This document shows positions 8,218 through 28,800 of a stretch of 30,057 nucleotides of DNA, in pieces. Both the position numbers and the translations under genes were made by a program. A model generated the notes under the pieces. It was not told where the DNA came from. It worked only from the letters and a program-made list of their open reading frames with translations, and did not search any database. Where the stretch lies: assembly GCA_002269645.1 (NCBI GenBank), contig NIVC01004960.1:1-30057 (forward strand), written 5' to 3'. Position 1 is the stretch's first letter. Each line of letters starts with the position of its first letter. Source of the DNA: Macrostomum lignano (taxonomy: Eukaryota).

Positions 8218-9340
8218 AGGTCTGCCGGAGCAAGTGAAGACGAGCGGAGTCAACTATCAACTTGACAGGTTTTCTTAACTCTTACCGCCTAGTAGATGCG
8301 TCATTATTCGATGCGATATTCAATCCCAACCGGTTAGTATATTCTTCGATGTTTGTTTGTTTAACCCTTGTACAACGAAGCCTATTTAGAAAAAAAGTAG
8401 TTGCAATCTGAGTCAATTTTTAAAGCGTCGTTTACTTGCCGAAATTGATTTCACTTCTATGCGGCCATTTATTGCACACGAGTCACATTGACTGTTTTAC
8501 ACAGATTACATGTTTTATTACTCGTAATTGTACGGCAATCGTGTTTCAGAACCTGGGCTTTTTCATTTGCCTTACCTACCCTTATTCAGTTTTGTATTGA
8601 AAAATATTTACAGTGTAGGAATGGCATATGACTGCAATAAGCACTTACTGTAACTGCATGTTTATCGGTACATGATTTCGTAGCCTAGTCAAGCATGCGC
8701 AGATCTTTGCTGTATTCTGTCAAATTGGTTGGCTGGTTCGGTTCACTAATCGATACTTGTACACAAATAGTGAAACGAATATTGTATGTTCTTCCTGCTC
8801 ATTATCAGTTGTGTCTACTGATCAGTAGTTATTTTTGGCTTTTGCTTCCTATTTCATATCGTACTGTTTTAGTTACTCATCCGTAGTTTGGAGTAGTTCC
8901 GTCTCTGTGATCATGCTTTTTCAAATTAGTTTGTTAACCAATTCATTAAATAAAGTAGTCTTTAAAATTTTATCCTTACTACAATACAGTTATTTAGTAA
9001 AGAAAAGTGCAGCATCTTCAATAATAAAGCTCTTCTTAAATGTATATTTTGCAAAAGGACTGCAAACTTATGCAATACCCGTATTTGTGAATATTAATGC
9101 TGTCGTGAAGCCGATGGCAGTTGTGATTGCGAGTGCACTGATAGTTGAGAAGTGGCAGCATGTAGGAGCTAACGAAATCAGATTTGGTATCTGAACACAA
9201 GTGGGGCTAGTCGATTTTGAGTAGATTTGGATTCGACTCTCAGTAGCCTTTAAAATTTGTGAAATGCCTAAAAAACCATTGCATTCAATCTTAGGCGAAT
9301 AATTTTATACTGTGTTGATATATACTAGGGTGTGGGTGGG

Positions 9341-9481
9341 CAACAAGTTGACGCGGTGCACGCTGGGCTGCTGCGCGCCGCCTTAAAGATCGGCTACGAG
9401 CGAGTGACCAACGCGGGTTTGTATCGCCGCGCCGGCCTGGTCTGTTCAAGCGACTTGTTGCGCCGTCGGCGACTCCAGCTA
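9341..9481 (+). mobile_element. RTE-like non-LTR retrotransposon ORF C-terminal fragment
   Basis: GC-rich island reading QQVDAVHAGLLRAALKIGYERVTNAGLYRRAGLVCSSDLLRRRRLQL, like the post-RT '..TN..LY.R......L.RRRL..AGH' segment of RTE LINEs. It is isolated in AT-rich DNA. Confidence 0.65.
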
Positions 9482-10953
9482 TGCAATATATGCAATATTT
9501 AATTAATTGCATATAAAAATACCGAAGGACTACAAAAAACAATTCGCAGTCATAAGTGTTTCCAGGCGTTACAGAAAGAAAACTACTATACACCAGCACC
9601 GCTTTGCAGCACCATCGAATTTGGGTTAAAGCTGTAAAATGGGGGGTCGTATTTACGTAGCCAAGCGCTCTTATGTGCCAGCGGCCCAGGCTCGATTCCA
9701 AGTGCAGTCATTAATTTGGATCTAAATTGGAATCTCGGCTTGGCTCTGCTCGGTCGTGAATGCAATTAACGCCTTTGAGGGCCAACCCCCAAAGGCACAG
9801 TGAAGTGTAAATGCCTAATGATAAATGAAGTTAGGGCCGCTACATGTTATGTGTGCTTGAGCGTATGACTGCGTACATATCCGCGCGCTTGTGTACCTGC
9901 TCAGGGAAGTCGGCGGAATGGCCAGTATATGCCGGTTGTGACAATGTCGCTTAAAGTGCGCCAGGGTGCACACAGCCATCTACCTGCCTCTAATACATAA
10001 GGAGTTCACTGCACTGCAAAAGTTCAAGAAACATTTTGCCTATCAACAGTTCTCGCTTGTCATTTTTCAGAGCTGCCTGTCGTGACTCGCACCATTGTGC
10101 AGAAGACTTGTGAGCGCAAACAGCTCTGAAATCCAGATTGAATAGGGATCAGGATCAGTGAGCGCCGCATGGACAGCATGCAGCTTGCTGGAATCGCACA
10201 GGCTGCAGATTGCAGTTAAGTGCAGCTTTCTTACACCCAGCTCCTCGACCACTCTGTGAGACTGGCGCTTTGCCAGGCGTTTTTGATGCCTATAAAAACC
10301 CATCACGTCCATGCATTGGAAAGTGCAGGCCATTAAACGACATGTTCATACATTAATTAAAGTTCGTGGATCATAGTTCGTATGATTATAACTTATGAGC
10401 GTATTTTAGATACATGTAAATGCACAGCTTCTTATTATTATATTAATATCTAAATCGCTCATTATTTCAGTACGAGCTACGAGCTATATAGAGTCGAACA
10501 CTGCAAATGCAAAATGTACATTAGTTGTTGGTGACACCGCTGTCCGTCAGTTAAAAATAGCTACGAGTATAAATGCTCGATCTTATCAGTCTAACGCAGT
10601 TGCATGAACTGCTTGTGCTTGCAGTTATAAAATTGTGTGCATAAAGTCAAGCGGAGCTACACGTGTATAAGACTTGCAAGTTCAATCCTAACTCAGCTCT
10701 TTATCTACTGTTTTGCTTTGTTTTATCCGACCAACACGAGTGGCATTTGTGCACACAGCCGTGTTTTGTAAGTCTTCAATTGTAAGGCTCTGCGTTCAAG
10801 AGGTGTCACAAAAATGAAATTGCAGCAGAAGCTTGTACAAACTTAATTATGCAGTATATACACTGTGGATTATACAATAATTTCAGCCATTGTGGTTTGC
10901 ATAATTTTGATCTTCCACTCAGATACAGCCATGTGTGCGCTTTTGCAGGATAG

Positions 10954-13900
10954 GAACTGGCCTCGGAAGCATCGGGAGTTCGGTTTGCCCTGCCGGGCGA
11001 CTCGGACGCAGAGGAGGAGCCAGGCCGGTGCTTGCTGAAGAAGTCTATCAGCATCGATCCCTTCGATGTATCGTGCAAGGTGATGCTGGTTGGCGACAGC
11101 GGCACCGGCAAGACCAGCTTTATGCACCAGTTCAAGGACGCCAAGTTTCCCGGCAGCACTTTTATCAGCACGGTCGGGGTCGACTACAGGGTTCGCTGTA
11201 TTTTTGCACCTTCTTACTCTCAGTTCTTAAATCTTTTAAGACATACTAAGATGTGCGTCTCATGCAAATTAACTTAATAGATGATGGAGAACGATCTATG
11301 AGGTGCTATTTTTTCAGCGAGCATCTCGTTTCTTCCTGACGAGGTTTTCCCGTCCATTTTATGACGATGTTTCGGCGGCCTGGGGTATATATATGTCACA
11401 GCTTTTCTATTGCCGAGACTTCCCCATTGGAACCTTTCGAGCCAATTCATGTTTCATGCTGCTGAAATGTAGATACGTTAAAAAATTAAATCGGTCACAC
11501 TATAGTAGGGGCACTAACTTTTGAGGCTCATGGCTTCAAAGTGGTCCATTTAGCAGTTCCCTGCGCAGGTCAGTTCACTTAGCGCAAAGACAGCCCTAAG
11601 AGCGCGGTCATTCACCTGAAAGCCCCCCCCCCGGGACACACTTGCACCCTCCGGGCACTATGAGCCCACGATCGCAGAGCCCATGAGCCCATGAGCATAG
11701 TCTTTACAAATTCTATGCTTCAAGACTCGTACATGCAATCGTTTTGCAGCTTGGCAGCCTCCCAGATCCTCAGTCAGTAATTTATATATATGTTTATTCC
11801 AGAGCAAAACACTGCCAGTGGATGGCTACAGAGTTCGCTTTCAGGTAAAATATACGCTCGTACTTTTACAGTTCACTTTTAGCTCAATTAGAATAATTCC
11901 ATTTGCTCACTAAGCTAGGTTGACGAAATCTAGGCTGCTAGGTACGCATACGTATATGTTTCTACTGTATTGCCCAGGACTACGAGCTATTTCTGATGAA
12001 GAAACATGAAGTAAGAAAAATATAGAAGCTTCTAGAATGTGAATCATCTTTCTCTTAAGCAGATATTTATTCTTTCCACATTTTAAACCCAGAGAGCTGA
12101 AAACTTTGCGCTCATGCAATTGACCAACCATGCAGCACGTGTCCCATCTTTCAGGTCTGGGACACGGCCGGTACGGAGCGATATCGGAGCATCACCAGTG
12201 CGTACTACAGAGATGCTGACTGTGAGCATTGCAAACCGTTTCCTCTTTCACGCTCATGCGCAAGTGTATTGCTATCATGGAAATGTGAATTCCTACTTTA
12301 GTAGTTCCAAAGTGACAAAACCATTCGACTAGAGTTACGAGTAGTTAAAAAGTAAGCGTGATAAAAGGCAGCGGTCATTTGCTTAAATTCGAGTATTAAG
12401 AAGAACCGGCAGGTAGGCAAGAGGCTGAGATGGGAAGAATTAATTTAGACAAGTGCAGAAGCGAAAGCATAGGTCTGTTGAGTGACTGCATCAATAAAAA
12501 CAGTCTCAGTGAGCTGGAAGCTCTCAAACCGACTTTTTGCCGAGCACAGCTATTCTGCTATTCTACGATCTGACCAGCCGCCAGACATTCAGCAGTGTCC
12601 GCTCCTGGCTCACGGACATTCGCGAATACGGCTCTGAGGATGTATTCATCATTTTGGTGGCCAACAAGGCTGATCTGGACTCTGAAAGGCAGGTTAGCGC
12701 TCACGAAGGGCAGAGGCTAGCTCAGGTGGGTCACACAGGTTAATTCTGAGTTTTCAATCCAGAAAATCAAGGGGGTCATTTTGATTTCAACGCTGCCCAC
12801 AGGAGTGCGACATAATGTGCTTTATGGAGACGAGCGCCAGGACGGGGCACAATGTTGACCTCTGCTTCCAAACAATCGGACGGTAAGTTGCCTTTCTTCT
12901 TCTGCATAAATGCTCTTGAAAAGCGTGCTATAACGATTTCCACGTTAACTATGAAATTCAAGCCTTCACTGGTCCATCTCACCCAAGCTGCAGCGATCCG
13001 GACAAAGTAAATTTGTATTTATCAGCTTGAAATATCGGTGCGACGCATCGGTTTTCAGTTGGAGTTTTCAGTCATCACACGATCAGCATGATGGCAAATA
13101 CACGATCAGAATGATGGCAAATACACGATCAGCATGATGGCAAATACACAATCAGCATGATGGCAAATACACGATCAGCATGCTGGCAAATACACAATCA
13201 GAATGATGGCAAATACACAATCAGCACGATGGCAAATACACAATCAGCACGATGGCAAATACACGATCAGCACGATGGCAAATACACAATCAGCACGATG
13301 GCAAATACACAATCAGCACGATGGCAAATACACAATCAGAATGATGGCAAATACACAATCAGCATGATGGCAAATACACGATCAGCATGATGGCAAATAC
13401 ACAATCAGCATGATGGCAAATACACGATCAGCATGATGGCAAATACACAATCAGCACGATGGCAAATACACGATCAGAATGATGGCAAATACACAATCAG
13501 CATGATGGCAAATACACGATCAGCATGATGGCAAATACACAATCAGCACGATGGCAAATACACAATCAGCACGATGGCAAATACACAATCAGAATGATGG
13601 CAAATACACAATCAGCATGATGGCAAATACACGATCAGCATGATGGCAAATACACAATCAGCATGATGGCAAATACACGATCAGCATGATGGCAAATACA
13701 CAATCAGCACGATGGCAAATACACGATCAGAATGATGGCAAATACACAATCAGCATGATGGCAAATACACGATCAGCATGATGGCAAATACACGATCAGC
13801 ATGCTGGCAAATGCACGATCAGCATGATGGCAAATACACGATCAGCATGATGGCAAATACACGATCAGCATGATGGCAAATACACGATCAGCATGCTGGC

Positions 13901-14573
13901 AAATGCACGATCAGCATGATGGCAAATACACGATCAGCATGATGGCAAATACACGATCAGCATGATGACAGCTCAATTTTAGTGCACTACTGAATTCACC
14001 AATTACTCACTATGACTCACTCTTGGCTTAGGCAGCTGCAAAAATATTTCTGCACAGCTCTACTATCGCTAATGCAACGACGAACACAAAAACAGGCTGT
14101 CACAAAGGTTTGATATTGTAGCAGCGCCCGCAGGACCCGCATATGCTCAAGGCTTATGTTCCAGGCTGATGCAGAAACTCAGCGAAATAGATGTCACTTA
14201 ACCAGTGCATCAGAAATCAACTTGCCTCATGGGATCTGATGGTGCTAGTAAGGTCAGCTTCTGAATGTGGTTTGAATGGCTTCGCAAGGCTGAGGGGAGG
14301 AGGCTATGGCTGGTAGCTTTTGTTGTAAACGAAATCATGAAGAAATGTTGAAAAAAACAAACTTCGTTGCTTTTTTATTCCCTATTATACCCCGTTATTA
14401 ATAATTCCCCAAGATCTAAATAGCGGCGCTGATGGATTGAAACTTGACTTATCAATTCAATGATCTTCAGGAAGCTTCTGGCAAAGCAAAACTTCCAAAC
14501 CAGCGGCTCGATCGCCCAGGCGGACTCGCGGCACCAGAGCGGTCACCGGCCAGCGTCCTGCGGCTACTGCTAG
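10954..14573 (+). CDS. RAB26: Rab26/Rab37-like small GTPase with switch-II Q>T; start exon not identified
   Basis: Exons ~10954-11190, 11803-11844, 12155-12221, 12550-12725, 12803-12882 and 14471-14573, all GT-AG and phase-compatible. Motifs: GDSGTGKT, FISTVGVDYR, WDTAGTERYRS, NKAD, ETSAR; C-terminus ...HRPASCGYC*. The 'FKD..F...TFISTVG.D.R' segment and intron positions resemble Rab26/37. Confidence 0.92.
13077..13967. repeat. 23-bp minisatellite, 39 copies, with higher-order structure
   Basis: Unit ACAC(G/A)ATCAG(CAT/CAC/AAT)GATGGCAAAT in the last Rab intron. It explains the spurious ORF 13157-13390. Confidence 0.98.
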
Positions 14574-15348
14574 GCGGCTCATTGATGCTGAAAAACTGCC
14601 ATTTTATCAAAACATTCCTGATAAAGTCGCTCTTTATATTGTCGGGGTCTGATCATCCATGCCTTTTACAAACAGTTTATGGACTCGGAGCAGCTTTGCT
14701 GGCTCTTTGATGCCTTTTCATTTCTCTGTATAATTAGTGGCGACACCGGGGTAATCTTTAATAGCTGAAATTTTAATACTGCTCAAGCTCTAGGACGCAT
14801 TATAAAATGTAATTAACCTGTCAAAAAAACTCAAATCAGTTGTGAAGCCGAAGTCATTTTTGTAGCCTCCACTTCGGTGAACCCAATTTTCTAATTTGCC
14901 ATTTCAGAATCAGTTTCCTATGACTAGTCTTCAATCTTAGTGAAATCTCACTTATTGGTAAATAGGCGTGCAGCAGTGTCTCAATTATTCTTTGAAGAAA
15001 TTAGAAGGGCCCTAAATGTAATGAAGGACATGAAAGACTTTAATTAATAATGTCAAAGATCAAACGGTTTCAGAATTGGTGAAAAATTAGAGATTCTCTC
15101 AGATGCTGGCGATGTCTTGGTTGGCTACTAGGTAACGAGAGTAGTTCAGATGTCCAAAATTCTCTGAAAAATGTTCTGCTCAGGACTGATTGATCTGCCC
15201 TTTACTTAGAGCCATGTATGGGTTTGCCTTCCGAAGCACATACGGAATGCTCCTGTCACCAACATGTGTATGAGAGGACCTTGAGAATTTTTCCAGGCAT
15301 TCAAAACCTACAAAAGCCTGATTACTTTTTGCCTAGCTTTTAATTAAG

Positions 15349-16046
15349 TAAACTGAGTCTGGGAGACAGGTGTGAGTAGTCATCTACTCAAATCCCAGTA
15401 AACTGAGTCTGGGAGACAGGTGTGAGTAGCCATCTACTCAAATCCCAGTAAACTGAGTCTGGGAGACAGGTGTGAGTAGCCATCTACTCAAATCCCAGTA
15501 AACTGAGTCTAGGAGACAGGTGTGAGTAGCCTTCTACTCAAATCCCAGTAAACTGAGTCTGGGAGACAGGTGTGAGTAGCCATCTACTCAAATCCCAGTA
15601 AACTGAGTCTAGGAGACAGGTGTGAGTAGTCATCTACTCAAATCCCAGTAAACTGAGTCTGGGAGACAGGTGTGAGTAGCCATCTACTCAAATCCCAGTA
15701 AACTGAGTCTGGGAGACAGGTGTGAGTAGCCATCTACTCAAATCCCAGTAAACTGAGTCTGGGAGACAGATGTGAGTAGTCATCTACTCAAATCCCAGTA
15801 AACTGAGTCTGGGAGACAGGTGTGAGTAGCCATCTACTCAAATCCCAGTAAACTGAGTCTGGGAGACAGGTGTGAGTAGCCATCTACTCAAATCCCAGTA
15901 AACTGAGTCTGGGAGACAGGTGTGAGTAGCCATCTACTCAAATCCCAGTAAACTGAGTCTGGGAGACAGGTGTGAGTAGCCATCTACTCAAATCCCAGTA
16001 AACTGAGTCTGGGAGACAGGTGTGAGTAGCCCTCTACACAAATTCC
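15349..16046. repeat. 50-bp minisatellite, ~14 copies, each unit palindromic
   Basis: Unit TAAACTGAGTCTGGGAGACAGGTGTGAGTAGCCATCTACTCAAATCCCAG, period exactly 50 from 15349 to 15999, last copy degenerate. Lies between the convergent Rab and P450 stop codons. Confidence 0.98.
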
Positions 16047-16404
16047 GACTTAGTAGATATAAAAGTGACAGATTTTAAGTTCACACGTACAGTTTCACTT
16101 ACCGAAAACATGAGCCGTAGCTGAAATTCCTTTTTATTGCTTTAACTACTGAACTAATATAGACGTCTATAGTAAAAAACAATATCTATATAAAATGCTA
16201 TAGCCCTTCTGCTGCTTACTCTTTTACATGACAAACCAGAACAGGAAATGAATAGTAACAAGATAATTAACACCTATATCGTAAAAATATGGCGGAACAG
16301 AAGCAAAGGGAGGGAGATAAGCAATACCTGGCGCAATTAGTTCAAAATATTGGGCTCAGCTCTGATTGATTTTCACATGAGGCTAGTGAAAGAGCCGCGT
16401 CACA

Positions 16405-18666
16405 CTAAAGCGTAAATGTCGCTCTCATCTGCTCCCTGGCCTGGAACTGAAAGACAACGTCCTCCGTCCAGGGCAGAATATCAACGCAGAAGGCGCTGGC
16501 GTCAACCTGAGCGCCTGTGCCTTCATCAGCGCGAATGCGGCACCGGCTCAGCAGCAGCACCAAGAACAGCTTAAGCTTCAACAGCCCGAGGCGCCGGCGA
16601 GGCCACAGACAGCCGAACGGCAGGGCCAGGAGCTCCGCATGCTGGGTCTCAAACAGAAAGCGCTGCGGCTGGAACGCCTGTGTGGCACAATGGACGGGAA
16701 TTCGCATTTCTGTACGGCAATAAAAGACTTTGTTGAAGCACACTAGAAATCATCCCAGTTAGGATTGAATTCGTTCTACGATACTTCAAGTGGGATTCAA
16801 GGTGTCGTGTCATTGCTGCCGCCAAGGAGATCGGAGTGTGCACTGTAAGGTCTGAACGACATCTCAAAAGTTCTGCTTTTGACTTCGAGACTCTACAAGT
16901 AGACCACCACCCTTACGTACGGCACCAACCCTCCTCCCCTGAATAAGTAACTTAGCAGACCGTATTTTAAGCTTAGCAAACCACACCGGATTATGATCTT
17001 CTATTCCAAAAGAATGAGATGACTTTAGATTTTTAAGATCTGAATGCTGCTAAATAGTTCGCTAGCTTTTTTACTAATAGCCATATCGAAGCGAATGTCA
17101 AAAGTAATCACTAATCTTAAGCTAGTACTGAGTGATTTAGACCCAGAATAACTAACAACATAGATCTATGTTCACCTGCACTTTCAATACTAACAGCCAA
17201 AAACTCACCTCTGGATTTTTGAACAGACTGGGGTCCATGTTCAATGAACGAAGCAGCACCCCGATCTCTTCACCGCTGTGCAAGCAGATGCCCTCAGAGT
17301 TCTTATGCGTCTGCAACAACAAGTCAGTTCCAGCTCTGAAGCTAACGAACTGCCCCGACGTGAGCCGGTAAACTTCTTTTACGAAGGCCTCTGAAATGAA
17401 AAGTTGACTCTGAGCTTCGCGAAATATTCAATAGAATCAAAGCAAGTGCCACCCACCAAGAAATGGCATCTCATCAAGCTCCTTGAGCGTCAATCGCCGA
17501 AATTCGTGCGGTCTTGCTGCGGTCGCCATGGAATCGATCTCGGCTAACAGGCTCTCCTGCACGGCTGTGTGAGATATGAGATAGTGAATTGCCCAGAAAG
17601 CTGCTTTCTTAGCACTGTAGTCGCTATAGAGACAGTTGATGCTGCAGCCGACAAAGGCTCTCCAAGACTTATTTGGATCTGGAAAATACATGAGTTAATT
17701 TTCTGAGATAACAAATAAAGCTATTGCTGCTAGTTTAGATTGGAGGTGTGACTTGTATTGGTCAGACCCGGTTTCCATGCTGTTCTGTTCCCTGTGCCAG
17801 TGTCTATGCTCATAGCGTTTTGGTTAGGACAGGCACTGCTGTTCTGTTCCCTGTGCCAGTGTCTATGCTCATAGCGTTTTGCTTAGGACGGCCGATATAT
17901 GGTAAATCAAACAGTCAACAAGCAGTTGCACGCACTCTTTAGGGCTCTGTTGAGTAAATCCTTGAAATGATGACATGGCTCAGCGGCAGCCAGCTCCTGG
18001 GCTGTCGGGTGCAGGCGATAGAGATTCTCCCAGGCTTTGTCCAGGTCGGCTTTACCCAATTTTGCTTGACTACCGGAAGTGCCACTGAAGAATGTCACAA
18101 AACCTTTTTCAAGCTCATGCAACGCTGCGTCCACAGCGTACGAGTGGAAGCGATGGTCCCGCTCGATTCCATAGATGCTGCAGATCGAGGAACCAAAGAA
18201 AGTATCCACGACAAAATAGGCTGCACTCTCTGGCGACCAGATATCCAAGAAGCTTCCTGAGCCGGCGCAGCGGACCCGCAGCATGCTGTCAACTTTGCTC
18301 GCGAAATTTCGCAGCTCCTCAAGAGCTCCTCTACCAGCTCCGATGCCAGCTCCGAGTCCATCGGCGGCATCAACGTCTGAGGCTGTGTCGCACCTGAACA
18401 CTTTTGCTCGTATTTTCGGGAGCAGTGGATGGATGAGTGGAGTGCGGTGATCTTTGGCAGCGTCCAACATCCAAGTCATCAGCTCCGGTGTGAGCACTAA
18501 ACCAAGTTTCTCTGTACGCTTGGAGCTGGGATAGGACACGCGCACCAGGTCTCCAATGTCTGAATGCGCTTGATGTAGCTTATTTAGTGCACCGGGATGA
18601 AGGCCCCAGCCATCTTTTGCGAACACTTCTGTCTCGATGCCATCCTCAGCCAGGCTTTGGTCTAAC
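16405..18666 (-). CDS. Cytochrome P450-fold protein (CYP7/8/39-like) with non-canonical heme motif; no start codon of its own
   Basis: Exons 18666-17936, 17678-17457, 17390-17209 and 16677-16405 are phase-compatible (2/1, 1/1, 1/0, 0/stop) and give ~469 aa without internal stops. Motifs: I-helix region ...DYSAKKAAFWAIHYLISH, K-helix KEVYRL (ExxR), DPSLFKNPEAFQPQRFL (PERF-like), LPFGCLWPRRRLGLLKLKLFLVLLLS (heme loop/L-helix). Confidence 0.9.
17778..17889. repeat. Two-copy tandem duplication (59-bp period) in P450 intron
   Basis: tgctgttctgttccctgtgccagtgtctatgctcatagcgttttg(g/c)ttaggac at 17778-17830 and 17837-17889, one mismatch. Confidence 0.95.
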
Positions 18667-18703
18667 CTGTTTGTTTGTTAATCAGTTAGATGTTTACGAG
18701 ATA

Positions 18704-20688
18704 TCATAAAAATTGGTAAATGAAAATCTCAATAATCTGATCCGATTGATACGAAATATGAGAGCCTACACACTGAATGAAGTGGCTAAAGCCTGGTTGA
18801 AGAATCAACCAGGTATCGTGTATGAAAATCTTTTTCCTGGGGTCATAAGTCAAAGCCGCATAGACAAAGAAAGAAAAACCAAGTCGTAAATGCACCAACT
18901 CTGTTTTGCTGGTGTTGATAACCGCCTCACAGAACTGGATGTCTGCCGAGGTGGCGGCGGCAGAGATGCACATTGGCTGGCCCGGGTGAGCCGCGGGCAT
19001 TGATGCGCACCGGGCCCGAGGCTGCGTAGGCATCTTTGTCGCCATGTGCAGTGGCGGCGGCGAGACCGAATCTGCCAGTGGCATGGCATTCTGCGAGATT
19101 GGCTTTGAAAGCTTTCCGAATGGTGCTAAAGAAATAGAGTCAGTATCGCTGGTTGTACTGCTTCTGGGAGCAAAAGACCGAGCAACGTTGCTGGATGCCG
19201 ACTGATTTACGAGAGCACGCTTCCGAGCTCTAGCCAGGCTTTCGAGTTTTTCGTTTGAATAGCTGACAAATATAATGTCTCCATCGTGTAGCTGGAGGCT
19301 GTCCGCCGTTGATTGATTTGAGATTTCCATCCACGGAACTGCATCTAAATGTGAAAACAGGACTGTTTAGCACAAGTTTGTCTGTCATCCACTTTTTTAA
19401 CTCTCGATTCGGGGACACCAGTCTAAAAAATGGGTAGATTGGGTCCATAGTTCTGGAGGTTGTATGGTAAATGGTAAATTGTGTCTGTGTTTTTTGAAGC
19501 AGACAAGGGTAGATTGTGTCTATGGTTTTGGAGGCAGACAATGGTAGATTGTGTCTATGGTTTTGGAGGCAGACAATGGTAGATTGTGTCTGTGGTTTTC
19601 GAGACAGACAATGGTAGAATGTCTCCGCCTTGGGCCTGGTTGAACGCAGAGGGTGCCTCTTCTGGCGTGGTGCACACGAATTTGAGCACAGCTCCGCATC
19701 ACTCGAGTTTTCAACGTTGAAGTGCCCAGAGCCCCAAGTACTATGTTAAAATTTCGTAGCTATTTTTTGCTTGTCAATCTTAAATGTCTTCTATTTTTTT
19801 GTTTTCGCACCGCAATCTTCATTGTTATGTGACGTGACTCAATTTGTGCGACAAGTAGTGAAGTAAAAAATGAACTTTAATATACTACTTCAGTATAATA
19901 TAATTTAAAGTAAGTTTAATAATATGCCATGGCTCACAGCTTACCGTCACTATGGTTTCCAAATATGTCGCCAAAGCCAGGCATGCCGTAGAAGCCGTCC
20001 AAACACAGTTTAAGAGCCTCACTTGTCGAGCCGAGCCCGAAGCGGCAGCAAAGACCTCGCAGAAGACAACCAAAGGGAACTCGTCGGTGCATTCGAACTC
20101 GCAGCTGAACAGTCCACAGCGACAAGTTTGAGTACGCTTCGCTCCCGTGGAACCGGCCAAGGCGCACAAACTGCCACAAGTAGTTCTCGTAATTGTGCTT
20201 CCTGACGCACAGCCAGAGGGTGACACTGTGCGCATCCCGACGAAGGCTCGTGGCCTCAAAGGACTGTCGCAAAGTCTTCTGGCAGCCGTGCAGGAAGCCC
20301 GGCTCTGGCTGTGGCCGTAGGCGGGTTTCTCTGGTTAGAAGCAATCTAAACCACTGGCACTGCGCGAGACTAGTAAGCTCTAGTAGTAGTTAGGAGTAGT
20401 TCTTGATTCTTGAACACTATATTTAAATGGCTTTACTATTCGCAGTCTCATTTTAGGCCTACAGTGGGCGTGAGTTGCGTATATTCAGGAGATTTTAAAA
20501 AGCCTCACCACTGGAACAGGACTTGAGCTCGCCGGTAGGGCGGTGGAAGAGTTATTTCGAGACCGCTGTGGTCCCGCTCTGCTGCAGTCACTGTAGATGC
20601 ACTTTTTCCACTCGCTATCGATTTCGAAATCGATAAAGATCTGATCGGAAGCAAGCTCTTCTGCAGCCGGTTCGGATGGATTAGACAT
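18704..20688 (-). CDS. Protein with integral SUMO/ubiquitin-like (Rad60/NFATC2IP-SLD-like) domain; 3' end may splice into the P450
   Basis: Exons 20688-20509 (ATG; GTG|GTGAGG), 20359-19945 (cgcgcag|TGC; G|GTAAGC) and 19344 onward (cacatttag|AT) are phase-compatible. Spliced sequence VQLRVRMHRRVPFGCLLRGLCCRFGLGSTSEALKLCLDG...MEISNQSTADSLQLHDGDIIFVSY follows the beta-grasp pattern (F/L.....L.......G......L..DG..I....T...L.L.DGD.I.V). The frame stays open to TGA at 18706-18704. Confidence 0.7.
19466..19624. repeat. Degenerate 35-bp tandem repeat (~4.5 copies) in intron
   Basis: AGACAATGGTAGATTGTGTCTATGGTTTTGGAGGC at 19501, 19536, 19571 and partial at 19606, plus decayed copies upstream. Confidence 0.9.
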
Positions 20689-22415
20689 TGGGGGGGGGGG
20701 GTTTGCTTTTTTGCTAAAACATAGAACTTAATGGTCCATAATTTTTAATCCATACAATATTACGTACTTCATCAAGCTTGACAAGCTGAAGTTTTTTTAA
20801 TTATCCCACAAAAGTTTGAGCATGCGGACGTCTATGGCACTGGCAGTTATGCTATCCAATGCAGTATTTTTTGAAAACTGCATTGTCGTAGGGCTATTTT
20901 TAGAAGTCTATTGTGTTCCCGACATATCCTACAAGTTGAATACCGAAAAAATGTAGATATCACCGGTTGAAAACCGCACTCAAACACTGTGTACAGGCGA
21001 AATAGACCTTTTTTTGTTGTTGTAGTTGTACAAAGCTTATTTATCTCTATTTTAAAGGGCTAGAACTCCTGTACCCAAAAGCCATTTGGGGCATTTTTGA
21101 AGGGCTATAGCTCGTGTACCCAAAGGCTCATTCACACTGCCACCGAATGAGGAATCAACTCACACTACTAATGTGCAAAAACGAATGAAAGTGGAAGTAC
21201 AAATGGTGTGATCACACGAATTTGGTCTTATTTTTAAAGTTGTTTAATTTAATTTACTTCATATAGAATTTATAGTCATATCACAAGCTTACGGCTTTCT
21301 ATATGCTTTCTATCTGGTTTTAAGTCTTAAATTTTAATAACGCGTTTATACATTTTTAAGACAAAGATACCTAAAACGCCATCAGTTATTTGTACGGCCA
21401 TCCAATTTTTCAGTAAGACAATCGCACAAGCCTTTCACTTTCATGCAGTGGCATGTATTGGATTCGTTGGATTGAAAATTCTTGCGATCGAAGACGGTTA
21501 ACAGTGGTTTAAGGGGATAAGGCAATCCATCAACCAAAAGCTTATTTTTTCTGTTACAAGCGCAGCAGCTTTGGTAAAGTCACTCGAGCATGAAACCGGC
21601 TGCAGCAATTAGTCCTGTTCTGCAGCAGCCCCTTTCCTGCTTTTCAGTCCTGCGCAGCACTCTGCCTGCTTGCCGGCACAGAGCACCGAGGCAGGCAACC
21701 CTTCGACCCATGCTATGCCGATTCGTTAGCTTGGGAAGCCACAGGAGTGGGGATTTGGGCGACCATTTGGGCTAGCTGCCATGCGTTAGGCAATATGGCT
21801 AGAGTTCGTTCTGGAAAAAAGCTCTTGTGTTCATGTATTATGATGAAAAATACAAAGTTCTGGGACTTATTTACACTGAAATGCGATACTTTGCCGTTCG
21901 CTCAAAACAAAGCCACTAAATTGTTTTGCTATCCAACCACAGACATCTTCAACGCAGAATCTTTCAGTGCAAAGTTCAAGCATACAGTCTCAACAGCATG
22001 AAGCACACTTTATAGCCTACTGTATATTTGAATTCAGAAGTAAAAATCAAATGCAAACACAAAAGTAATTACGCAAGCATATGCAACAATGAATCAGCAT
22101 ATTTCCATATTTTCCCCGAAGTGTATAGCCAGTGCAAACTTGATATTGAATTTTAACTGAATCTGTCTGCGAGAAGACTCCAAGTGGCGGGCTTTTAGAT
22201 TTTATACCGCGCAAAATGCATGGTAGCTGAGGTATCTAGGCATAGTTATTGCAAGAACCTGCGGGCTCTGCAGAGAATGCTAGTGTTTGGGGAAGCTGAA
22301 TATAACTATAAGCTATAGTTCATTTGCAGTGCAGGCTACCACGTCCACCTAGTATAAGAGTTGTTATGCCAATAGATAAAATGGTACATCGTACCTTGCA
22401 TTCAGCGGGCATCTC

Positions 22416-25400
22416 TTACACACGCAGGGGATTGATTTGCACGCGCTGCTGCTGAAAATTGTGATTGCGGTCACTGCTGTCACTTCTACTGTCACAGTTT
22501 TCATCAACAGAGCCTCCAGCAACACCGCAGCCATCAGCGACACCGCCTGCACTGTTCAACGGTGAAGCGCGCAGAACTTGCATAGGAAGGGACTCCGCGC
22601 GCTGTTGATGTCGCTGCTGCTCGGGACCCGGTGGCTGCCGAACACACAGCAGCTGCTGCTGCTGCTGCTGTAGCAAGAGCTGCCGGGTGCGGTCTGAGTC
22701 GGAGTCAAAGCGAATCACCCGGGCCGGTGGCTTCTTTCGTCGGCGCATGGTGTAGAGCATGTTGCGCCGAAAGTTGCGACTCCAAACGCAGTAAATGAAA
22801 AAGTTGATAGCGGAATTGAATAGTGTCAGTAGCGAGCCAACCGAGTACAAGTATGAGTTGAACCATGCGCTCTTGTCGAATTTTGTGCCCAGGAGCATGT
22901 GCCAGATGGTGCCAGGTATCTCGGTAAGCACGAACACGGCAATAATGACGACCAGCATTTTGGTCTCCTCAGTGCGCCGCGTGGTCTCCCGAGTAATGGC
23001 GGCGCGGATTCGCGAGGCCACCAGCAAACTTCGAATCAAAAGAATGTTAAGGGCCGTCAGGCATAACATAGGCCCAACTGTAAGCAGGAGAATGTACAGC
23101 AATTTCTTATATATAAACATGTACGCACTACCCAGACTTTTCGGGCGCGCCAAAATCAAGCTGATATTTAAGCACTTTATCGTATCCGATTTATACTCCA
23201 GGAATAGCGGGAAGTTGTAAAACATGGCCGTAATCGTGACGCATATGCAGTAAAGCCTTGACCGCTTCGGATTGCTGCGCTGCGTGGATAAGAACGGATT
23301 CTGCACAACCATATAGCGATCCAGTGCCACCAGCAGGACAATCCAGTTCCGACCTGTTCGTGCAACATTGCCCAGATAATAAACAGCTGGCAGGATTAAC
23401 TGAATGCCGGGACTGGCATGGAGCCATGTCTGCAGAGTTACGCCATGTGAGTCCTGGATGATGGAGCCCAGGCCCATGTACACAACGAAGTAGGGCGCCG
23501 ACAGTAAGATGAAGGTCAAATCGACTGCAATGAAGAAAATCAGTTGGTTTGGGTGTCGGTAGAATGTCTTGCCACTGGATAGTGACAGATTCAGGTGCAG
23601 TGTTTCGTTAACGACCGTTCTTACGCGGGTAAAAGCGTACTTTAATCATTACGCTCGAAATAAAACAGGGGACAATTTGAAGAGGGAAAGTTTGAAGTAA
23701 AACTTTTCCCACATATCCAATAGCATATCCAATAGCATAGCATACTAATAAGTTCGTTGATTGACAGCGCCTGAATCCACTTAAGATTTTTTATTACAGC
23801 TGTTACAGAGAAGAAACAGAAACTTAATTTATCCCGCATGTGTGCTTCAAGTTCAGCTACAGTGGAGGAAGGCTGCAATTTTTTATAAATAAGAACAAAA
23901 TTAGGACAAAAGAGTGTATTCAACAAGCGTATCATTTGCATCCCGGTGCATCAAACTCTGTGCCGGATGATGAGTTCCAGAGGCCCAACCCAGCTAGAAT
24001 TGGTTTTCTGTACTCGTACACGCTGATCAGAACTAATCATGCATTGATCAAAATGGACTTCAATATGGTGCTTAGGCAACAGTAGCCAAGTTACCGGCTG
24101 ACAACTCAGTGGCGACCCTGACCCTTTGGAATCACAGCCTACTGCAAACGTCATGCATTGGTAGATCGAAGAATTAATTAATTTCCGCTGAAATTAACGA
24201 AAAGCGAAATCGAAATGTCACCTGAAATCAGTTGTACAACAGGACTGAAAATGTCAGTACTTTATTGGGTCTCGTATACATACGAGCGTATGCGCCGAAC
24301 AAAAAGAACTCTTGTTTAAACGATTTCGTTATAAATGACTAGATTATTTTTTTATAAGAAAATTTCGACGGGCAAAGTCGAAAGTGTGCCAAGCTTAAAT
24401 ACAGGGAAAAGTCAAACTGTTCTTAATCACTGGTTAATATATACATACTCAGCAGGAGCCTTGAGTTGCTCGTGAGTTACTCGTAGCTGCAAGCGCGTTC
24501 CCTCCCGGGGTCCAAAAATGACTCAAGTTGGAATTTTCTTCTGATAAACAGTCTCTCGGGATGCCAGTCAAGAGAAACGAAAGGATGATTAAGCTGCATC
24601 AGAGCAAAGGAGCAAAAGGGCTCTCGCCGGCGAATCTCCTGGCTAATCAAGCCGAACGCAAGTTGCGATATTAACCGGGGGTTTGTATGCTCAATCAGGC
24701 AAAGCGAAAAGAGAAAAAGCTTCTTGCTCCCTGGCTCACTTTGCTAACTTTTTTCTCCCCCCCCTCCTCCACTGGCCTCACAGTCGGCCACTCACTCTTG
24801 GTACGAGCTGGAAACACTCAGCCAGTGCGCGCTCCAGGGGGCGATCGGGATTTAAAGAAGTACCGATAGCGAGCTCAAAAATCAAGATGAACAACTTTTC
24901 AAAAGACGAGTGCGAGAGTTGAGATCGGGCCGTGAGCAAACGCGTCAATCCGAAGTGAAACGTCTCAGTTTAACTAAGCCTTGGCTCTGGCGATCGAGCT
25001 TCTTTTGCTGTAAACGGGAGATTTTCTTTCACGCTAAATCCTTTCTTGCACTAAAGAATCCTTATACATATTGTTCCTCACGTCACATTTCTTATCTTGC
25101 ACTACAAGAAGTTCACTAAAAGCATTTTGATAAAAGCAACACGACGTCCATTCTCGGGTTGATAAAATATGCATCAAATTAGGATGCATATCTATGCTGG
25201 TAAATCTAGTGAAAAAAAGAAATAGTATCTCGAATAGCATAAAGCTAAATAGAAGGGGATTAGGTGGGGAAGCAGCCACCAGTCAGTTAGAAATGAGCTC
25301 AGAGCTCCTGAAATTCGCGAAAGGCTCTGTTTTCTAGAGAAATGAGGAATTTATGTAAAGGTGGCGATTTTTGGGAGTGGCATATTTCTGGGGTTAATAA

Positions 25401-25826
25401 TCTGAGTTAGTAAAAAATCTGAACGTTCAAGCCACGACGCTAAGTCGAAACCTGAAATACTGTTAGTCTTGGGAAGAAAAAGATTGTGCGGAGGTGCCTT
25501 TCTAGACCCGAAAAGGTAATCCCATCGTTTGCACCCAGTATTTTTTGTACTAACAAAAAGGAAATAAAAAGCTCACAGATTGCAAGAGCCAGGAGTAGAA
25601 TACTCATTGATGATCGGCGCACATCTCGCTTGAGCACGACAATAGACAGTGAATTGAGAAGCAGGCCAAGCAAGCAGATTGCGGAGGATAGACCAACGTC
25701 AGTGACAAGAATGAAGCGGCGCTCGCTGTCAGTGAAGAGACGTAAGCTTTTAGCGCAATCGTCCTCGGTGCCATTGCCAGTAGCGTTGGCTTCTTCAGAT
25801 GAGTCGTTAAAGAATGCACCTTTCAT
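22416..25826 (-). CDS. Class A (rhodopsin) peptide GPCR, FMRFamide/sex-peptide-receptor-like, 2 coding exons
   Basis: Exon 25826-25577 (MKGAFFNDSSEEANATGNGT... with 3 N-glycosylation sequons; TM1 LLGLLLNSLSIVVL; T|GTGAGC) joins exon 23524-22416 (cattgcag|TC). This yields LALAIFD (TM2 LAxxD), LDRY, FPLFLEY, FVLTEIP and NSAINFFIY (TM7), ending QINPLRV*. Confidence 0.95.
22653..22670 (-). repeat. (CAG)6 coding microsatellite, polyQ in GPCR tail
   Basis: ctg x6 on the + strand encodes the QQQQQQ of LLLQQQQQQLL. Confidence 0.9.
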
Positions 25827-28800
25827 GCAGTGATAGAGCTGAAGAGTCAAGGGCCAAAAGTGCCGACAGATTACTTTGCCTTGCCTTGGCGTTTCGATCC
25901 GGTTGATTTAGGATCTCTCAGCTGCTAGTAGGCGGGGCAGGTCCGACTGTATGCGGTATACCATCTAATGCACAGAACTATCGCCTGAGGTCCAATGGGG
26001 CAAGCAAGCTCTTGGTGCATGGCTTTCAGTATTCCCTGTATTTTAGCCTCAGCCAATCAACTATGAGAGAGGCATCTCTGGCCGACTGTTCTGATGCTAA
26101 AATCCCAAAACAAGAAACTGCGAAATGAATTCACAGACCAAGTTTGGTGGGATGGTTTGTGTGATGAATAAGTTAGACAAACTTCCAAGCTTGAATAAGA
26201 CAAAATTCTAGAAGTTTGCCATGCAGTTTCATCAGTTTTGAGAAAGAAGTCGCTAACCTTGTCGCTAAAGCACACGGTCATTGATCTTTTTCACCCCAAT
26301 GCAATGACTCACCCCAACCGATGACCCAGTTCAAATAAAGCATCGTGTTATACGGCTAGCTAGGAAAGTGCACATGCAAAGGTAACTGCAAAAGGAAGCA
26401 GCTAGCGTTGTGTGCTCCTGTGAAACTGGTACTAAAGTCTAACAAGAATGGGCCATAAAAGTCTTCAGTGCCGATGCATCCTACGAGAATCAACCACGTA
26501 GATAGAGGTCGTAAAGAGTTGCCGGCTTTTTACAATCAAAGGTCAAACAGCCAGGGTGGCATTACCACTTTGATTAGTAAGTAGCTGGTGTACACATAGC
26601 CAGAGCAATTACTGTTTGAACAAGCAGGAGTTATAAAGTCACTTTATCTTTAAACAGGAATTCAGGTGCCACGGCGAGGTGAAACGAATCTGCCGTATTA
26701 CCTGTATAAGTACACAATAATAAGTAAACTGAGACCAAGGAATGCCATTTGCCCCTGTGTCAATAGAATATACAAGCATGCCACTAAATCTGATAGTTTC
26801 TGAAATATGCCGACGCTTGCCCTGCGCATCGGTCCTTGGTCTTCAGGACTACAGTAATGGGCATTGGGAGCGGGCATGCCACATAAGTGAAGTCTAGGGA
26901 AAAAGAATTGAAAGCACTGATTCCTTCTTCTTGCTTCTCCGACAGCCCATAATTGGAAGCAGGCGTGCAAAGGGCAGCTGGAAAGGCTGGGAATTCGGGT
27001 TGAACGGGATGGTGCTGGGCATTTTGCGTGTTCCCAGTGCCTCTTCGTTTTTTCGATCTGTTGATCTCTTGTAAAGCAGATTGTGTGGTGACGGACGCGC
27101 AAGAATTTTTCCAGCAGATTTCGTGTGCACCGTAGTGTCTCTGTTTCTCTTCGATCTGCTGGTCTCTCTTGTAAAGCGCAAAGCGTAGCAAGCGCAAGAA
27201 TTTGTCAAACCAAATGAGTGACATTGTGAGTGATAAGCGTGCTTACTTTATCTGTTCATACGAAGTTAAATTCATCCAAGTTCGAAACAGTTTACCCTTG
27301 CCCTTATCCACATGTACTATTCAACGTTCCAAACTTTCATAGCAAAACATAGCATAGCAAAGAAATTCTACTGTTACTATTAAAGCTACAGAATTATTAA
27401 TTAGACTTGCTATTACCCACACTGCAACTCATTCTCAGACGGTCAGAGCCAGAACACAAATTAAAAAGCTTAGTCTAAAGTCTGCTATCCAGAAGCTGAA
27501 CACAGAAGTCCCACCCTCGCACGCCAAATGGAATCAGGGCGTTCATTGAGAGCAAAAGCAGGGCATATATGCGTTGATTACCATTCAAATGAATACAGCG
27601 GCGGACACCTGATAGCTGGTAGCTCAAAAGTTTCTGGACCCATCGGAACCCGAACTCGCCATCAAAACCTGAGCCAACGCAATCCTTAAGCACCCTTGCT
27701 TATTTCGCAAACAGCTGCTCAATTTGATCGTTAATTAAAACCCAACAAGCTGCTGGTCCCCGAGACCATATGGTTAAAGTTGAATAACTTTGATAGAGCC
27801 AGAATTACAAACTGGCCTCAACCAGGGATCGGAGGTCCGGCTTTGGAGCCTGACATGTACTTCAGAGCTTTAATGCATACGGTGTTACTTCAATGAAATC
27901 TGAAGCTTGACTAAATTCAACTCTGGACTGTCTGTGCAAATCCTCTCGGGTGACAATACAACTAGTTTACGGTCAAACTGACATGGATGAGCACGGCTCT
28001 AATGAAGCACAAGAAAACAGCGACCACTTGCTTTAAGAAATTTAAGTGTTTGCTAGACTTTAAGCACACGGCCCAATGAACTTTATAAATAGGGAACAGC
28101 ATCACGTACTTTTACTTAGCTCTACGGACACAGCAGTATTATAGACAATCATGCGTGTGACGAAGTGATGATTCGGTTAATTTTCAACATCGATGAAAAG
28201 ATTTCCAACCATACTTAAGACACAATGGCCCGACTGAAGAAGCCGATGTTTACAATGGCCCGAGGCCAGTAAGCAGGAAGGGCGAGGCCCACGAACAGCA
28301 TCTACTTGCACGAACGACACCGCCAGGACTTGACTCCACAGCCAGTCAGCCTCTGCACAGGGATTGAGTGGAACGGGATGCAGTTACAGGGGTTGCCCAA
28401 TTCAGAGTAGCGCTTCGGCTGGGCCAGCTGCAAGGACTGAGGAGGGTTTCTAGGCTTGAGCACGCAAGCAGCAGTTCTCTGCAGTTTGAAATCATTCTTT
28501 TCCTAAGATTCTGACACCACGGTTATTCTGCATGAATCGTGGGTGACAAATTTATGAAGCCTTTCTGAAACAACGCTTTTGATCAAAAGTAATTTGTTGA
28601 ATTTTTTAGCATTAGCAGAGCAGCCATTTAGCAGCTAATTGAGCTTTTGTGAGCATTTTTTAATTTTCACGTTTTATAGCTTCTAAAAAAACTTTTCAAA
28701 ATTAATCGCAGAAAGAGCAATTATTTTGCAAAGTTTAATTTAGAGTGTTGCATTAGTCTTCACTATTTTTAAATAAGCTAAAATTATTTGATTCTACTCA

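What the first reader, a model, noticed from the sequence alone, without database searches (positions are those of the whole stretch)
16405..20688. Candidate SUMO-like-domain / P450 fusion gene
Seen: the P450 exons begin at an acceptor (aaacag|G, 18666, phase 2, branch-like CTAAC upstream). The first in-frame Met lies well inside the fold (…ELMTWML), and there is no N-terminal anchor. The open frame continuing the SUMO-like exon (19344 onward) runs to within 38 nt of that acceptor. It encodes a Ser/Pro-rich linker, then a hydrophobic segment followed by basic residues (LVHLRLGFSFFVYAALTYDPRKK) like a microsomal P450 signal-anchor. Three junctions join the two in frame: TG|GTTGAT 18810 to 18666; TC|GTATCA 18753 to 18666; T|GTGAGG 18931 to ttag|AC 18661. 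Inference: one ~800-860 aa protein made of a novel N-terminal region, a UBL domain, a linker (with or without TM) and a P450 fold. I know of no P450 with a SUMO/ubiquitin-like domain. It could link a sterol/lipid-binding fold to SUMO or proteasome machinery.
Basis: partly seen in the sequence, partly recalled or inferred. Interest (0 to 1): 0.85.

Follow-up and report, generated by a model that had tools for sequence, protein, structure and literature searches.

The report
SUMO-like domain fused to cysteine-less P450
This flatworm (Macrostomum lignano) gene is already annotated as one 798-residue "hypothetical protein"; it joins a SUMO-shaped interaction domain to a very divergent cytochrome-P450-like domain that has lost its heme-binding cysteine, which is an unusual and undescribed combination of unknown function.

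Summary
The window is Macrostomum lignano contig NIVC01004960.1. The finding's span (20688-16405, minus strand) is exactly the public gene BOX15_Mlig033662g3 (PAA46266.1, 798 aa). I rebuilt its CDS from seven GT-AG exons. That annotation is guided by RNA-seq and already fuses the two parts. It removes the "signal-anchor-like" segment, which is only weakly hydrophobic.

The N-terminal domain is SUMO-like. A profile of its family hits SUMO2/3 and SMT3 first. An AlphaFold model (pLDDT 85) matches SUMO structures (TM 0.7-0.85). It belongs to a family of otherwise standalone 218-372 aa Macrostomum proteins.

The C-terminal part passes Pfam p450 (E 1.3e-18), but only its last ~200 residues are recognisable. 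The heme signature is absent: FGCLWPRRRLG has Arg where the thiolate Cys should be. The I-helix acid-alcohol pair is also missing.

Across the three genomic copies this domain shows 9 synonymous and 3 non-synonymous changes (dN/dS about 0.1). It is therefore maintained, probably as a non-catalytic ligand-binding or scaffold module.

I saw no reads. The fusion rests on annotation pipelines, reading-frame logic and the lack of a poly(A) signal. The gene is real and unusual, but lineage-restricted and of unknown function.

The parts
20509..20688 (-). Exon 1 (aa 1-60). ATG at 20688. Acidic, Ser-rich tail containing a SIM-like stretch, DQIFIDFEIDSE.
   Evidence: The CDS rebuilt from these exons equals PAA46266.1/P0001. 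The donor is gtg|GTGAGG. The SIM-like motif was read by eye only.
19945..20308 (-). Exon 2 (aa 61-182, first base). First part of the SUMO-like domain.
18900..19344 (-). Exon 3. End of the SUMO-like domain (to about aa 226), then the Ser/Pro-rich linker (aa ~232-330). It ends at the weak donor aga|GTTGGT.
   Evidence: Across the three copies the linker shows 1 synonymous and 3 non-synonymous changes.
19211..20266 (-). Coding span of the SUMO-like domain (aa 75-226), interrupted by intron 2 (19944-19345).
   Evidence: Family of standalone homologues. Profile against PDB hits SUMO2/3 and SMT3 first. AF2 pLDDT 84.9. Foldseek top ~50 hits are SUMO, with TM 0.7-0.85 normalised to the target.
18667..18899 (-). 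Intron 3 of the public model (233 nt). If retained, the frame runs on through the weakly hydrophobic segment to a stop at 18706-18704, giving a 394-aa product with the SUMO-like domain only.
   Evidence: There are no indels and 3 substitutions among the three copies, which is uninformative.
17936..18666 (-). Exon 4. Start of the P450-like domain (aa 330/331 onward). It has no start codon of its own.
17457..17678 (-). Exon 5. I-helix region (SAKKAAFWAIHYLISH) without the acid-alcohol pair.
17209..17390 (-). Exon 6. K-helix ExxR motif (EVYR).
16405..16677 (-). Exon 7. PxRF motif (FQPQRF), degenerate heme loop, stop at 16407-16405.
16585..16617 (-). Remnant of the heme-binding loop, FGCLWPRRRLG (aa 729-739). 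Arg737 (CGC, 16593-16591) sits where the thiolate Cys should be.
   Evidence: PROSITE PS00086 pattern is absent. HMMER alignments to CYP17A1 and CYP1A1 put Arg at the Cys position, and the alignment to CYP11A1 puts Trp there. The loop is identical in all copies.
16133..16138 (-). First canonical poly(A) signal (AATAAA) after the stop codon. There is no AATAAA or ATTAAA between 19881 and this site.

Best explanation
One gene on the minus strand of a Macrostomum lignano contig makes a soluble 798-aa protein from seven exons.

**Architecture**
- An acidic N-terminal tail.
- A SUMO-like beta-grasp domain that cannot be conjugated. It is internal, has no Gly-Gly end, and carries two extra helices and a long loop.
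- A disordered Ser/Pro-rich linker of about 100 residues.
- A P450-fold domain with no membrane anchor.

**How the fusion forms.** A weak donor inside the last exon of a SUMO-like-domain family gene (18900) is cis-spliced to the acceptor at 18666. That acceptor would otherwise have received the P450's own first exon.

**The P450 domain.** It keeps the structural motifs ExxR and PxRF. It has Arg in place of the axial Cys and lacks the I-helix acid-alcohol pair. It therefore most likely does not carry out heme-thiolate monooxygenation. It is nonetheless under purifying selection.

**Inferred function.** The P450 domain acts as a ligand-binding or scaffold pseudoenzyme. The SUMO-like domain tethers it to partners that recognise SUMO surfaces (SIM-containing proteins or Ubc9-type factors).

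**Shown versus inferred**
- Shown: the exon structure, the frames, the domain identities, the motif losses and the selection pattern.
- Inferred: that the fused mRNA is the main product, and everything about function.
For: - The CDS rebuilt from the window equals PAA46266.1, and all introns are GT-AG.
- The gene span equals the finding's span.
- The annotation is built from RNA-seq with StringTie/TACO. TBONE cuts transcripts at spliced-leader and poly(A) sites, and ORFs come from TransDecoder (PMC5730564).
- The three loci g1, g2 and g3 all carry the 798-aa model.
- UniProt models from another assembly share the SKTE|LDQS junction.
- The P450 exon cannot start translation by itself. Its frame closes 11 nt upstream and its first Met is codon 63. 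The ATG that ends the M. lignano spliced leader (PMC8629364) would be out of frame at both 18666 and 18661.
- There is no AATAAA or ATTAAA between the two parts.
- SUMO-like domain.
- P450: Pfam 67.5 bits against a cut-off of 22.8.
- Cys is absent from the heme loop.
- Substitutions among the copies: P450 domain 9 synonymous and 3 non-synonymous (dN/dS ~0.10, P = 2e-4); SUMO-like domain 2 and 0; tail plus linker 1 and 6.
Against: - I examined no RNA reads, and the 18900 donor is weak (score -3.4, against -0.5 to 7.4 for the gene's other donors). Intron retention, or a rare read-through junction, could therefore dominate.
- Every other family member found is a standalone protein without a P450.
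- I found no orthologue of the fusion, or of this P450, outside M. lignano. The word-index search is insensitive, because one search missed known family members.
- The N-terminal 265 residues of the 'P450' part have no detectable similarity to any solved P450, and the AF2 model failed (pLDDT 31.6).
- The three copies are 98-99% identical, so the selection test rests on 21 substitutions.
Confidence: 0.65

Rival explanations
1. These are two genes in one transcriptional unit (operon-like). The SUMO-like-domain gene ends at the stop at 18704. The P450-like gene is matured separately, by spliced-leader trans-splicing at 18666 or from another first exon. On this view the 798-aa model is an artefact of assembling read-through or rare cis-spliced RNA and then taking the longest ORF.
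For: - 15% of M. lignano genes are estimated to lie in operons, with typical spacing of ~100 bp, and 30% are trans-spliced (PMC8629364).
- The stop at 18704 lies only 37 nt from a good acceptor.
- The annotated donor is weak.
- All relatives of the upstream part are standalone proteins that end soon after the domain.
Against: - The annotation pipeline cuts units at mapped spliced-leader and poly(A) peaks, and it left this one whole at three loci.
- There is no canonical poly(A) signal between 19881 and 16138.
- A spliced leader joined at 18666 or 18661 gives 7-aa or 26-aa out-of-frame ORFs. The P450 frame would then start 63 codons in, after two out-of-frame ATGs.
- Models from another assembly use the same junction.
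Confidence: 0.17
2. The fusion is real and the P450 domain is still a working hemoprotein. It would use an unconventional axial ligand, for example Cys731 of FGC. It might act as an isomerase- or peroxygenase-type P450, which needs neither a reductase nor the I-helix threonine.
For: - Strong purifying selection on the domain.
- ExxR and PxRF are kept.
- A Cys lies six residues upstream of the canonical position.
- From general knowledge: CYP8A1, CYP5A1 and CYP74 lack the I-helix Thr and work without a reductase.
Against: - The PS00086 pattern is absent. No alignment places a Cys at the ligand position: Arg in two alignments and Trp in one.
- Phe-Gly-Cys spacing is incompatible with the conserved Cys-pocket geometry (established P450 structure knowledge).
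- No model of usable confidence could be made.
Confidence: 0.1
3. The P450-like part is a decaying relic carried along on the transcript of a functional SUMO-like-domain gene. It has no function of its own.
For: - Loss of the Cys ligand and of the I-helix motif.
- Extreme divergence: the best PDB hit is E 1.5e-8, over the C-terminal part only.
- No similarity for the N-terminal half.
Against: - The 468-codon frame is intact across four exons in three copies.
- 9 synonymous against 3 non-synonymous differences, dN/dS ~0.10, P = 2e-4 against neutrality.
Confidence: 0.07

Closest known systems
Natural P450 fusion proteins with a partner domain N-terminal to the P450 (XplA flavodoxin-P450; PpoA/linoleate diol synthase and CYP5619 peroxidase/dioxygenase-P450)
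   Same: The P450 fold sits at the C-terminus of a multidomain polypeptide. An unrelated domain replaces the membrane anchor. The CYP5619 family is described in PMC5919972; the rest is from general knowledge.
   Different: In those proteins the partner is a redox or catalytic domain that feeds the heme, and the P450 keeps its Cys ligand. Here the partner is a SUMO-like interaction domain and the Cys is gone.
SUMO-like-domain (SLD) proteins of the Rad60/Esc2/NIP45 type
   Same: Both have an internal, non-conjugatable SUMO-fold domain without a Gly-Gly end. This protein also has an acidic N-terminal tail with a SIM-like hydrophobic stretch, read by eye.
   Different: Those proteins have two tandem SLDs at the C-terminus and match Pfam Rad60-SLD. 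Here there is one SLD with large insertions, no Pfam hit, and a P450-like domain follows. The protein is not a member of that family.
Standalone Macrostomum SLD family (e.g. BOX15_Mlig015520, Mlig022324, Mlig027574, Mlig014754, Mlig010594)
   Same: They share a homologous domain, 29-42% identical, with the conserved W-T, R-x-G and C-x-D-G-F-x-G motifs and a conserved Pro.
   Different: They are 218-372 aa long and end 30-60 residues after the domain, and none carries a P450. The neighbour of the closest one is TRAPPC13, not a P450.
Animal microsomal and mitochondrial P450s (best sequence matches: CYP11A1, CYP17A1, CYP1A1, CYP7A1, CYP8A1)
   Same: The I-helix to L-helix region aligns. ExxR and PxRF are present. 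The overall length is collinear with a full P450.
   Different: The thiolate Cys, the acid-alcohol pair and the N-terminal anchor are all missing. The N-terminal half is unrecognisable. The sequence cannot be assigned to any CYP clan.

Membership tests
Cytochrome P450 (Pfam PF00067) | Profile match above Pfam's gathering score | tested here: met
   67.5 bits against a cut-off of 22.8, E 1.3e-18. Only residues 271-432 of the 468-aa part match, aligned to HMM positions 283-440 of 462.
Cytochrome P450 (Pfam PF00067) | Heme-thiolate signature FxxGxRxCxG (PROSITE PS00086) with the axial Cys | tested here: not met
   The regex finds no match. The loop reads FGCLWPRRRLG. Arg737 aligns with the Cys of CYP17A1 and CYP1A1, and Trp aligns with the Cys of CYP11A1. 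The loop is the same in all copies.
Cytochrome P450 (Pfam PF00067) | K-helix ExxR and PERF/PxRF structural motifs | tested here: met
   EVYR and FQPQRF are present.
Cytochrome P450 (Pfam PF00067) | I-helix (A/G)Gx(D/E)T(T/S) oxygen-activation motif | tested here: not met
   The I-helix region reads SAKKAAFWAIHYLISH.
Cytochrome P450 (Pfam PF00067) | Complete P450 fold, including the N-terminal beta-rich half | tested here: inconclusive
   The length is collinear with full P450s (query 183-411 aligns to chain 177-405 of CYP90B1). The first 265 residues hit no solved P450, and AF2 failed (pLDDT 31.6).
Cytochrome P450 (Pfam PF00067) | Heme binding with a 450-nm CO-difference spectrum | not testable with these tools
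   Needs recombinant protein.
Microsomal (class II) P450 | N-terminal transmembrane signal-anchor | tested here: not met
   In the public CDS the domain is internal. The candidate segment is intronic and has a 19-residue hydropathy mean of only 1.05-1.08.
SUMO / SUMO-like beta-grasp domain | Beta-grasp fold superposable on SUMO | tested here: met
   AF2 model with pLDDT 84.9 and pTM 0.79. Foldseek against PDB gives almost only SUMO1/2/3 and SMT3 in the top 50, with E 3e-5 to 5e-4 and target-normalised TM 0.67-0.85.
SUMO / SUMO-like beta-grasp domain | Sequence-profile similarity to SUMO | tested here: met
   The family profile against PDB gives di-SUMO2 at E 7.7e-7 and single SUMO2/3 and Drosophila Smt3 at E 3e-3 to 1e-2. 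It aligns beta2-alpha1-beta3 and the last strand. The match is weak but consistent.
SUMO / SUMO-like beta-grasp domain | Pfam ubiquitin or Rad60-SLD model match | tested here: not met
   No UBL family at E <= 10 in any of 10 family members.
Conjugatable SUMO/ubiquitin modifier | C-terminal Gly-Gly exposed or exposable by a protease | tested here: not met
   The last strand reads DGDIIFVSYSNEKLE and is followed by a helix and the linker. There is no GG.
Rad60/Esc2/NIP45 (RENi) family | Two tandem C-terminal SLDs | tested here: not met
   There is a single SLD. The linker and tail have no similarity to the SLD family.
Spliced-leader-resolved operon pair | Poly(A) signal or site for the upstream gene, and a translatable downstream ORF after spliced-leader addition | tested here: not met
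   No AATAAA or ATTAAA lies between the parts. The spliced leader's ATG is out of frame at both acceptors. Spliced-leader and poly(A) reads themselves cannot be tested here.

The most novel reading that the evidence does not exclude
This would be a naturally evolved, selectively maintained P450-fold pseudoenzyme: the thiolate Cys is replaced by Arg, and it has no membrane anchor. It has been captured by a lineage-specific SUMO-like-domain gene. The result would be a soluble sensor or adaptor that couples small-molecule (sterol or lipid) binding by a dead P450 pocket to SUMO-type protein-protein recognition. That domain logic has not been described for any P450.
Probability: 0.2. Interest if true: 0.7.

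Novelty: new variant of a known kind. Interest (0 to 1): 0.45.

Why it matters
P450s are studied almost entirely as heme-thiolate catalysts. Their known natural fusions are to redox or catalytic partners. A P450 fold that has lost its cysteine, stays under purifying selection and is tethered to a SUMO-like module would be an example of a P450 pseudoenzyme put to a non-catalytic use.

It would also show how a lineage-specific gene family can capture an enzyme fold through a weak internal splice donor. M. lignano is amenable to transgenesis and RNAi, so the idea can be tested.

If the fused model turns out to be a read-through artefact, the locus is instead a cautionary case for operon-rich genomes.

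Tried and rejected
- **AF2 model of the P450 part.** With only three near-identical sequences it gave pLDDT 31.6 and is unusable.
- **Word-index homologue search with the P450 part.** It found only the three M. lignano models. The same search with the SLD profile found only one known member. This tool therefore says little about absence in other species.
- **PDB search with the N-terminal half of the P450 part.** No P450 hit.
- **Comparing the three paralogous loci, to decide whether 18899-18667 is coding.** There were only 3 substitutions (2 synonymous and 1 non-synonymous in the read-through frame) and no indels, so the test is uninformative.
- **Idea that the linker (…NAMPLADSVSPPP…) is a remnant of a second SLD-family gene.** hhalign found nothing beyond the self-overlap, so I rejected it.
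- **Transmembrane-anchor reading of LVHLRLGFSFFVYAALTY.** Its hydropathy is too low and it is intronic in the public model.
- **UniRef names of the relatives** (Rad60-SLD, Spt5-NGN, SH2, FERM, protein kinase and others). They are inconsistent with the sequences, and I did not use them as evidence.
- **Literature.** There is no paper mentioning Mlig033662 and nothing in the supplements of PMC5816591. I found no report of a UBL-P450 fusion, and no relevant paper on Cys-less natural P450s beyond CYP5619.
- **Wasik et al. 2015 annotation methods.** The paper is not in the searchable library, so I could not check them.
Full report
**Origin and observation**

A search with the downstream exons returned a 100%-identical 798-aa protein, [quoted passage not shown] (PAA46266.1), whose only contig is 30,057 bp long. 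The contig look-up shows the window is NIVC01004960.1 of assembly GCA_002269645.1. It places that gene at exactly 20688-16405 on the minus strand, which is the finding's span.

I rebuilt the CDS from the window. The exons are 20688-20509, 20308-19945, 19344-18900, 18666-17936, 17678-17457, 17390-17209 and 16677-16405. All introns are GT-AG, and the translation is identical to the database protein.

- The acceptor at 18666 is in phase 2 and follows CTAAC.
- The P450 frame is closed 11 nt upstream, and its first Met is 63 codons in.
- The exon-3 frame stays open to a stop at 18704.

The three proposed junctions are in frame, but none of them is the one in the public CDS. That junction is ACAGA|GTTGGT at 18900, joined to 18666, giving …NTSKTE|LDQSLAEDG….

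The "signal-anchor-like" segment therefore lies in intron 3. Its 19-residue hydropathy mean is 1.05-1.08, which is not convincing for a membrane anchor.

**Is the fusion real?**

I could not look at reads, so this rests on indirect evidence.

1. The Mlig_3_7 annotation is not ab initio. Transcripts were assembled from RNA-seq alignments (STAR, StringTie, TACO). They were then cut into genes wherever spliced-leader reads or poly(A) reads mapped (TBONE), and ORFs were called with TransDecoder (PMC5730564). The unit was left whole at all three loci of this gene, g1, g2 and g3, each giving 798 aa.
2. Two UniProt models from a different assembly (712 and 745 aa) differ elsewhere but use the same SKTE|LDQS junction. 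The donor is weak (score -3.4, against -0.5 to 7.4 for the gene's other donors). That is not what a gene predictor would pick without transcript evidence.
3. The P450 exon cannot be translated by itself. The M. lignano spliced leader ends in ATG (CGGTCTCTTACTGCGAAGACTCAATTTATTGCATG; PMC8629364). Joined to 18666 or 18661, it opens 7-aa or 26-aa out-of-frame ORFs.
4. There is no AATAAA or ATTAAA on this strand between 19881 and 16138. The first one follows the final stop codon.

Several points count against the fusion. The donor is weak, so an intron-retaining mRNA encoding a 394-aa SLD-only protein is plausible. Operons are common in this species. All relatives of the upstream part are standalone proteins. 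I put the fused protein as a real product at about 0.65-0.75.

**The N-terminal domain**

Pfam finds nothing in it. An exhaustive HMMER search with residues 1-239 found nine further clusters, with E values from 1e-28 to 4e-5. All are 218-372 aa proteins that match residues ~55-230, and none carries a P450.

Eight of the clusters are M. lignano hypothetical proteins. The ninth comes from an unidentified RNA-seq run (SRR30276812) and is 56% identical to Mlig022324.

The family shares invariant W-T, R-x-G, D-G-F-x-G and P positions. A profile of the domain searched against PDB sequences returns SUMO2/3, Drosophila Smt3 and yeast SMT3 as essentially all the top hits. Di-SUMO2 scores E 7.7e-7 and single domains score 3e-3 to 1e-2. 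The alignment covers beta2-alpha1-beta3 (…RLGL…L.FC.DG) and the last strand.

An AlphaFold2 model built on the ten-sequence alignment is confident (pLDDT 84.9, pTM 0.79). Foldseek against the PDB gives almost only SUMO structures among the top 50, with probability 1.0, E from 3e-5 and target-normalised TM 0.67-0.85.

The domain has two helices inserted between the first two strands and a loop of about 40 residues before the last strand. It has no Gly-Gly end. It is not a Rad60/NIP45-type protein, because it has a single SLD and no Pfam Rad60-SLD match.

**The P450-like domain**

Pfam p450 is well above threshold (67.5 bits, E 1.3e-18). However, it covers only residues 271-432 of the 468-aa part. 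The best solved relatives are remote (CYP11A1, E 1.5e-8) and span several clans (CYP17, 1A, 7A1, 11B, 2A6, 8A1). They again match only the I-helix-to-L-helix region.

The first 265 residues hit no solved P450. They are collinear in length with a full P450. AF2 failed for lack of alignment depth.

ExxR (EVYR) and PxRF (FQPQRF) are present. The PROSITE heme signature is absent. The loop reads FGCLWPRRRLG. In the alignments to CYP17A1 (FGA-GVRVCLG) and CYP1A1 (FG-MGKRKCIG), the first Arg and the Gly match the conserved R and G, and the third Arg (CGC, 16593-16591) occupies the Cys position. The CYP11A1 alignment puts Trp there. The I-helix reads SAKKAAFWAIHYL and has no acid-alcohol pair.

The loop is identical in all genomic copies and in the models from the other assembly, so it is not a sequencing error.

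**Selection**

The three loci are 98-99% identical, including their introns. The counts of variable codons are as follows.

| Region | Synonymous | Non-synonymous | Note |
|---|---|---|---|
| P450 domain | 9 | 3 | dN/dS ~0.10; binomial P = 2e-4 against neutrality |
| SUMO-like domain | 2 | 0 | |
| N-terminal tail plus linker | 1 | 6 | |

Folded domains compared with disordered segments give Fisher P = 0.016. The Cys-less P450 fold is therefore maintained, not decaying, and the linker behaves like a disordered tether. The numbers are small, and gene conversion cannot be excluded.

**Most likely mechanism**

The protein is soluble and has no anchor. A SUMO-like recognition module, possibly with a SIM-like acidic-hydrophobic stretch (DQIFIDFEIDSE) in its own tail, is tethered to a P450-fold pocket.

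That pocket cannot ligate heme through cysteine. It therefore most likely serves as a binding or scaffold domain rather than as a monooxygenase.

The gene probably arose when a member of the Macrostomum SLD family came to lie upstream of a P450 and a weak donor in its last exon captured the P450's second-exon acceptor. That replaced the anchor exon. This last step is inference.

**Comparison and novelty**

Natural P450 fusions are known, with N-terminal partners in XplA, PpoA and CYP5619 (PMC5919972). Their partners are redox or catalytic domains, and the heme Cys is kept.

I found no report of a UBL/SUMO-like-P450 architecture or of this gene. The gene model itself is public but unnamed and unstudied.

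I rate it a new variant of a known kind. Interest is moderate (0.45): the gene is unusual and testable in a tractable flatworm, but it is lineage-restricted, its function is unknown, and the fusion is not yet confirmed by reads.

Noticed in passing
window 22416-23519 (minus strand); also 25440-25850 (minus): A 367-aa ORF matches Pfam 7tm_1, the rhodopsin-type GPCR family (E 2.4e-13). It lies ~1.7 kb upstream of the gene on the same strand. It is not among the genes called on this contig. A second ORF further upstream has a weak Srw-type 7TM hit.
   Followed up: partly
window 585-1082 (minus strand): A 165-aa ORF matches the ZSWIM1-3 RNaseH-like and MULE transposase domains. It is probably a transposon fragment.
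   Followed up: no
window 15347-16043; 17778-17889; 19470-19622: Three tandem arrays: 50 bp x 13.9 copies just downstream of the gene's poly(A) signal, 59 bp x 1.9 in intron 4, and 35 bp x 4.4 in intron 2. The two intronic arrays have more copies in the sister loci g1 and g2.
   Followed up: partly
L002 (g1 locus), intron 2, about 7160-11640 in locus coordinates: The g1 copy of the gene spans 9.5 kb instead of 4.3 kb. About 4.5 kb of extra DNA sits in intron 2, and its content was not examined.
   Followed up: no
window 20620-20655 (aa ~16-27, DQIFIDFEIDSE): The acidic N-terminal tail contains a hydrophobic core flanked by acidic and Ser residues, which resembles a SUMO-interacting motif. Other family members have similar stretches in their tails, for example P0011 (DFDISEDSEIFVSSDDI). 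This was read by eye only.
   Followed up: no
window 11083-14573 and 5883-8217; L002 and L003: The same neighbours flank all three copies on the 3' side: an Arf/Ras-type small GTPase gene (191 aa, opposite strand) and a TB2/DP1/HVA22 (REEP-like) gene. The three loci are therefore segmental duplicates of a larger block.
   Followed up: partly
L004 (Logan contig from SRR30276812), 111-767: An intron-less transcript contig from an unidentified sequencing run encodes a standalone member of the SUMO-like-domain family, 56% identical to Mlig022324. The family therefore exists outside the M. lignano reference genome.
   Followed up: partly
window 20689-20701: A run of 12 C residues sits two bases upstream of the annotated start codon.
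   Followed up: no
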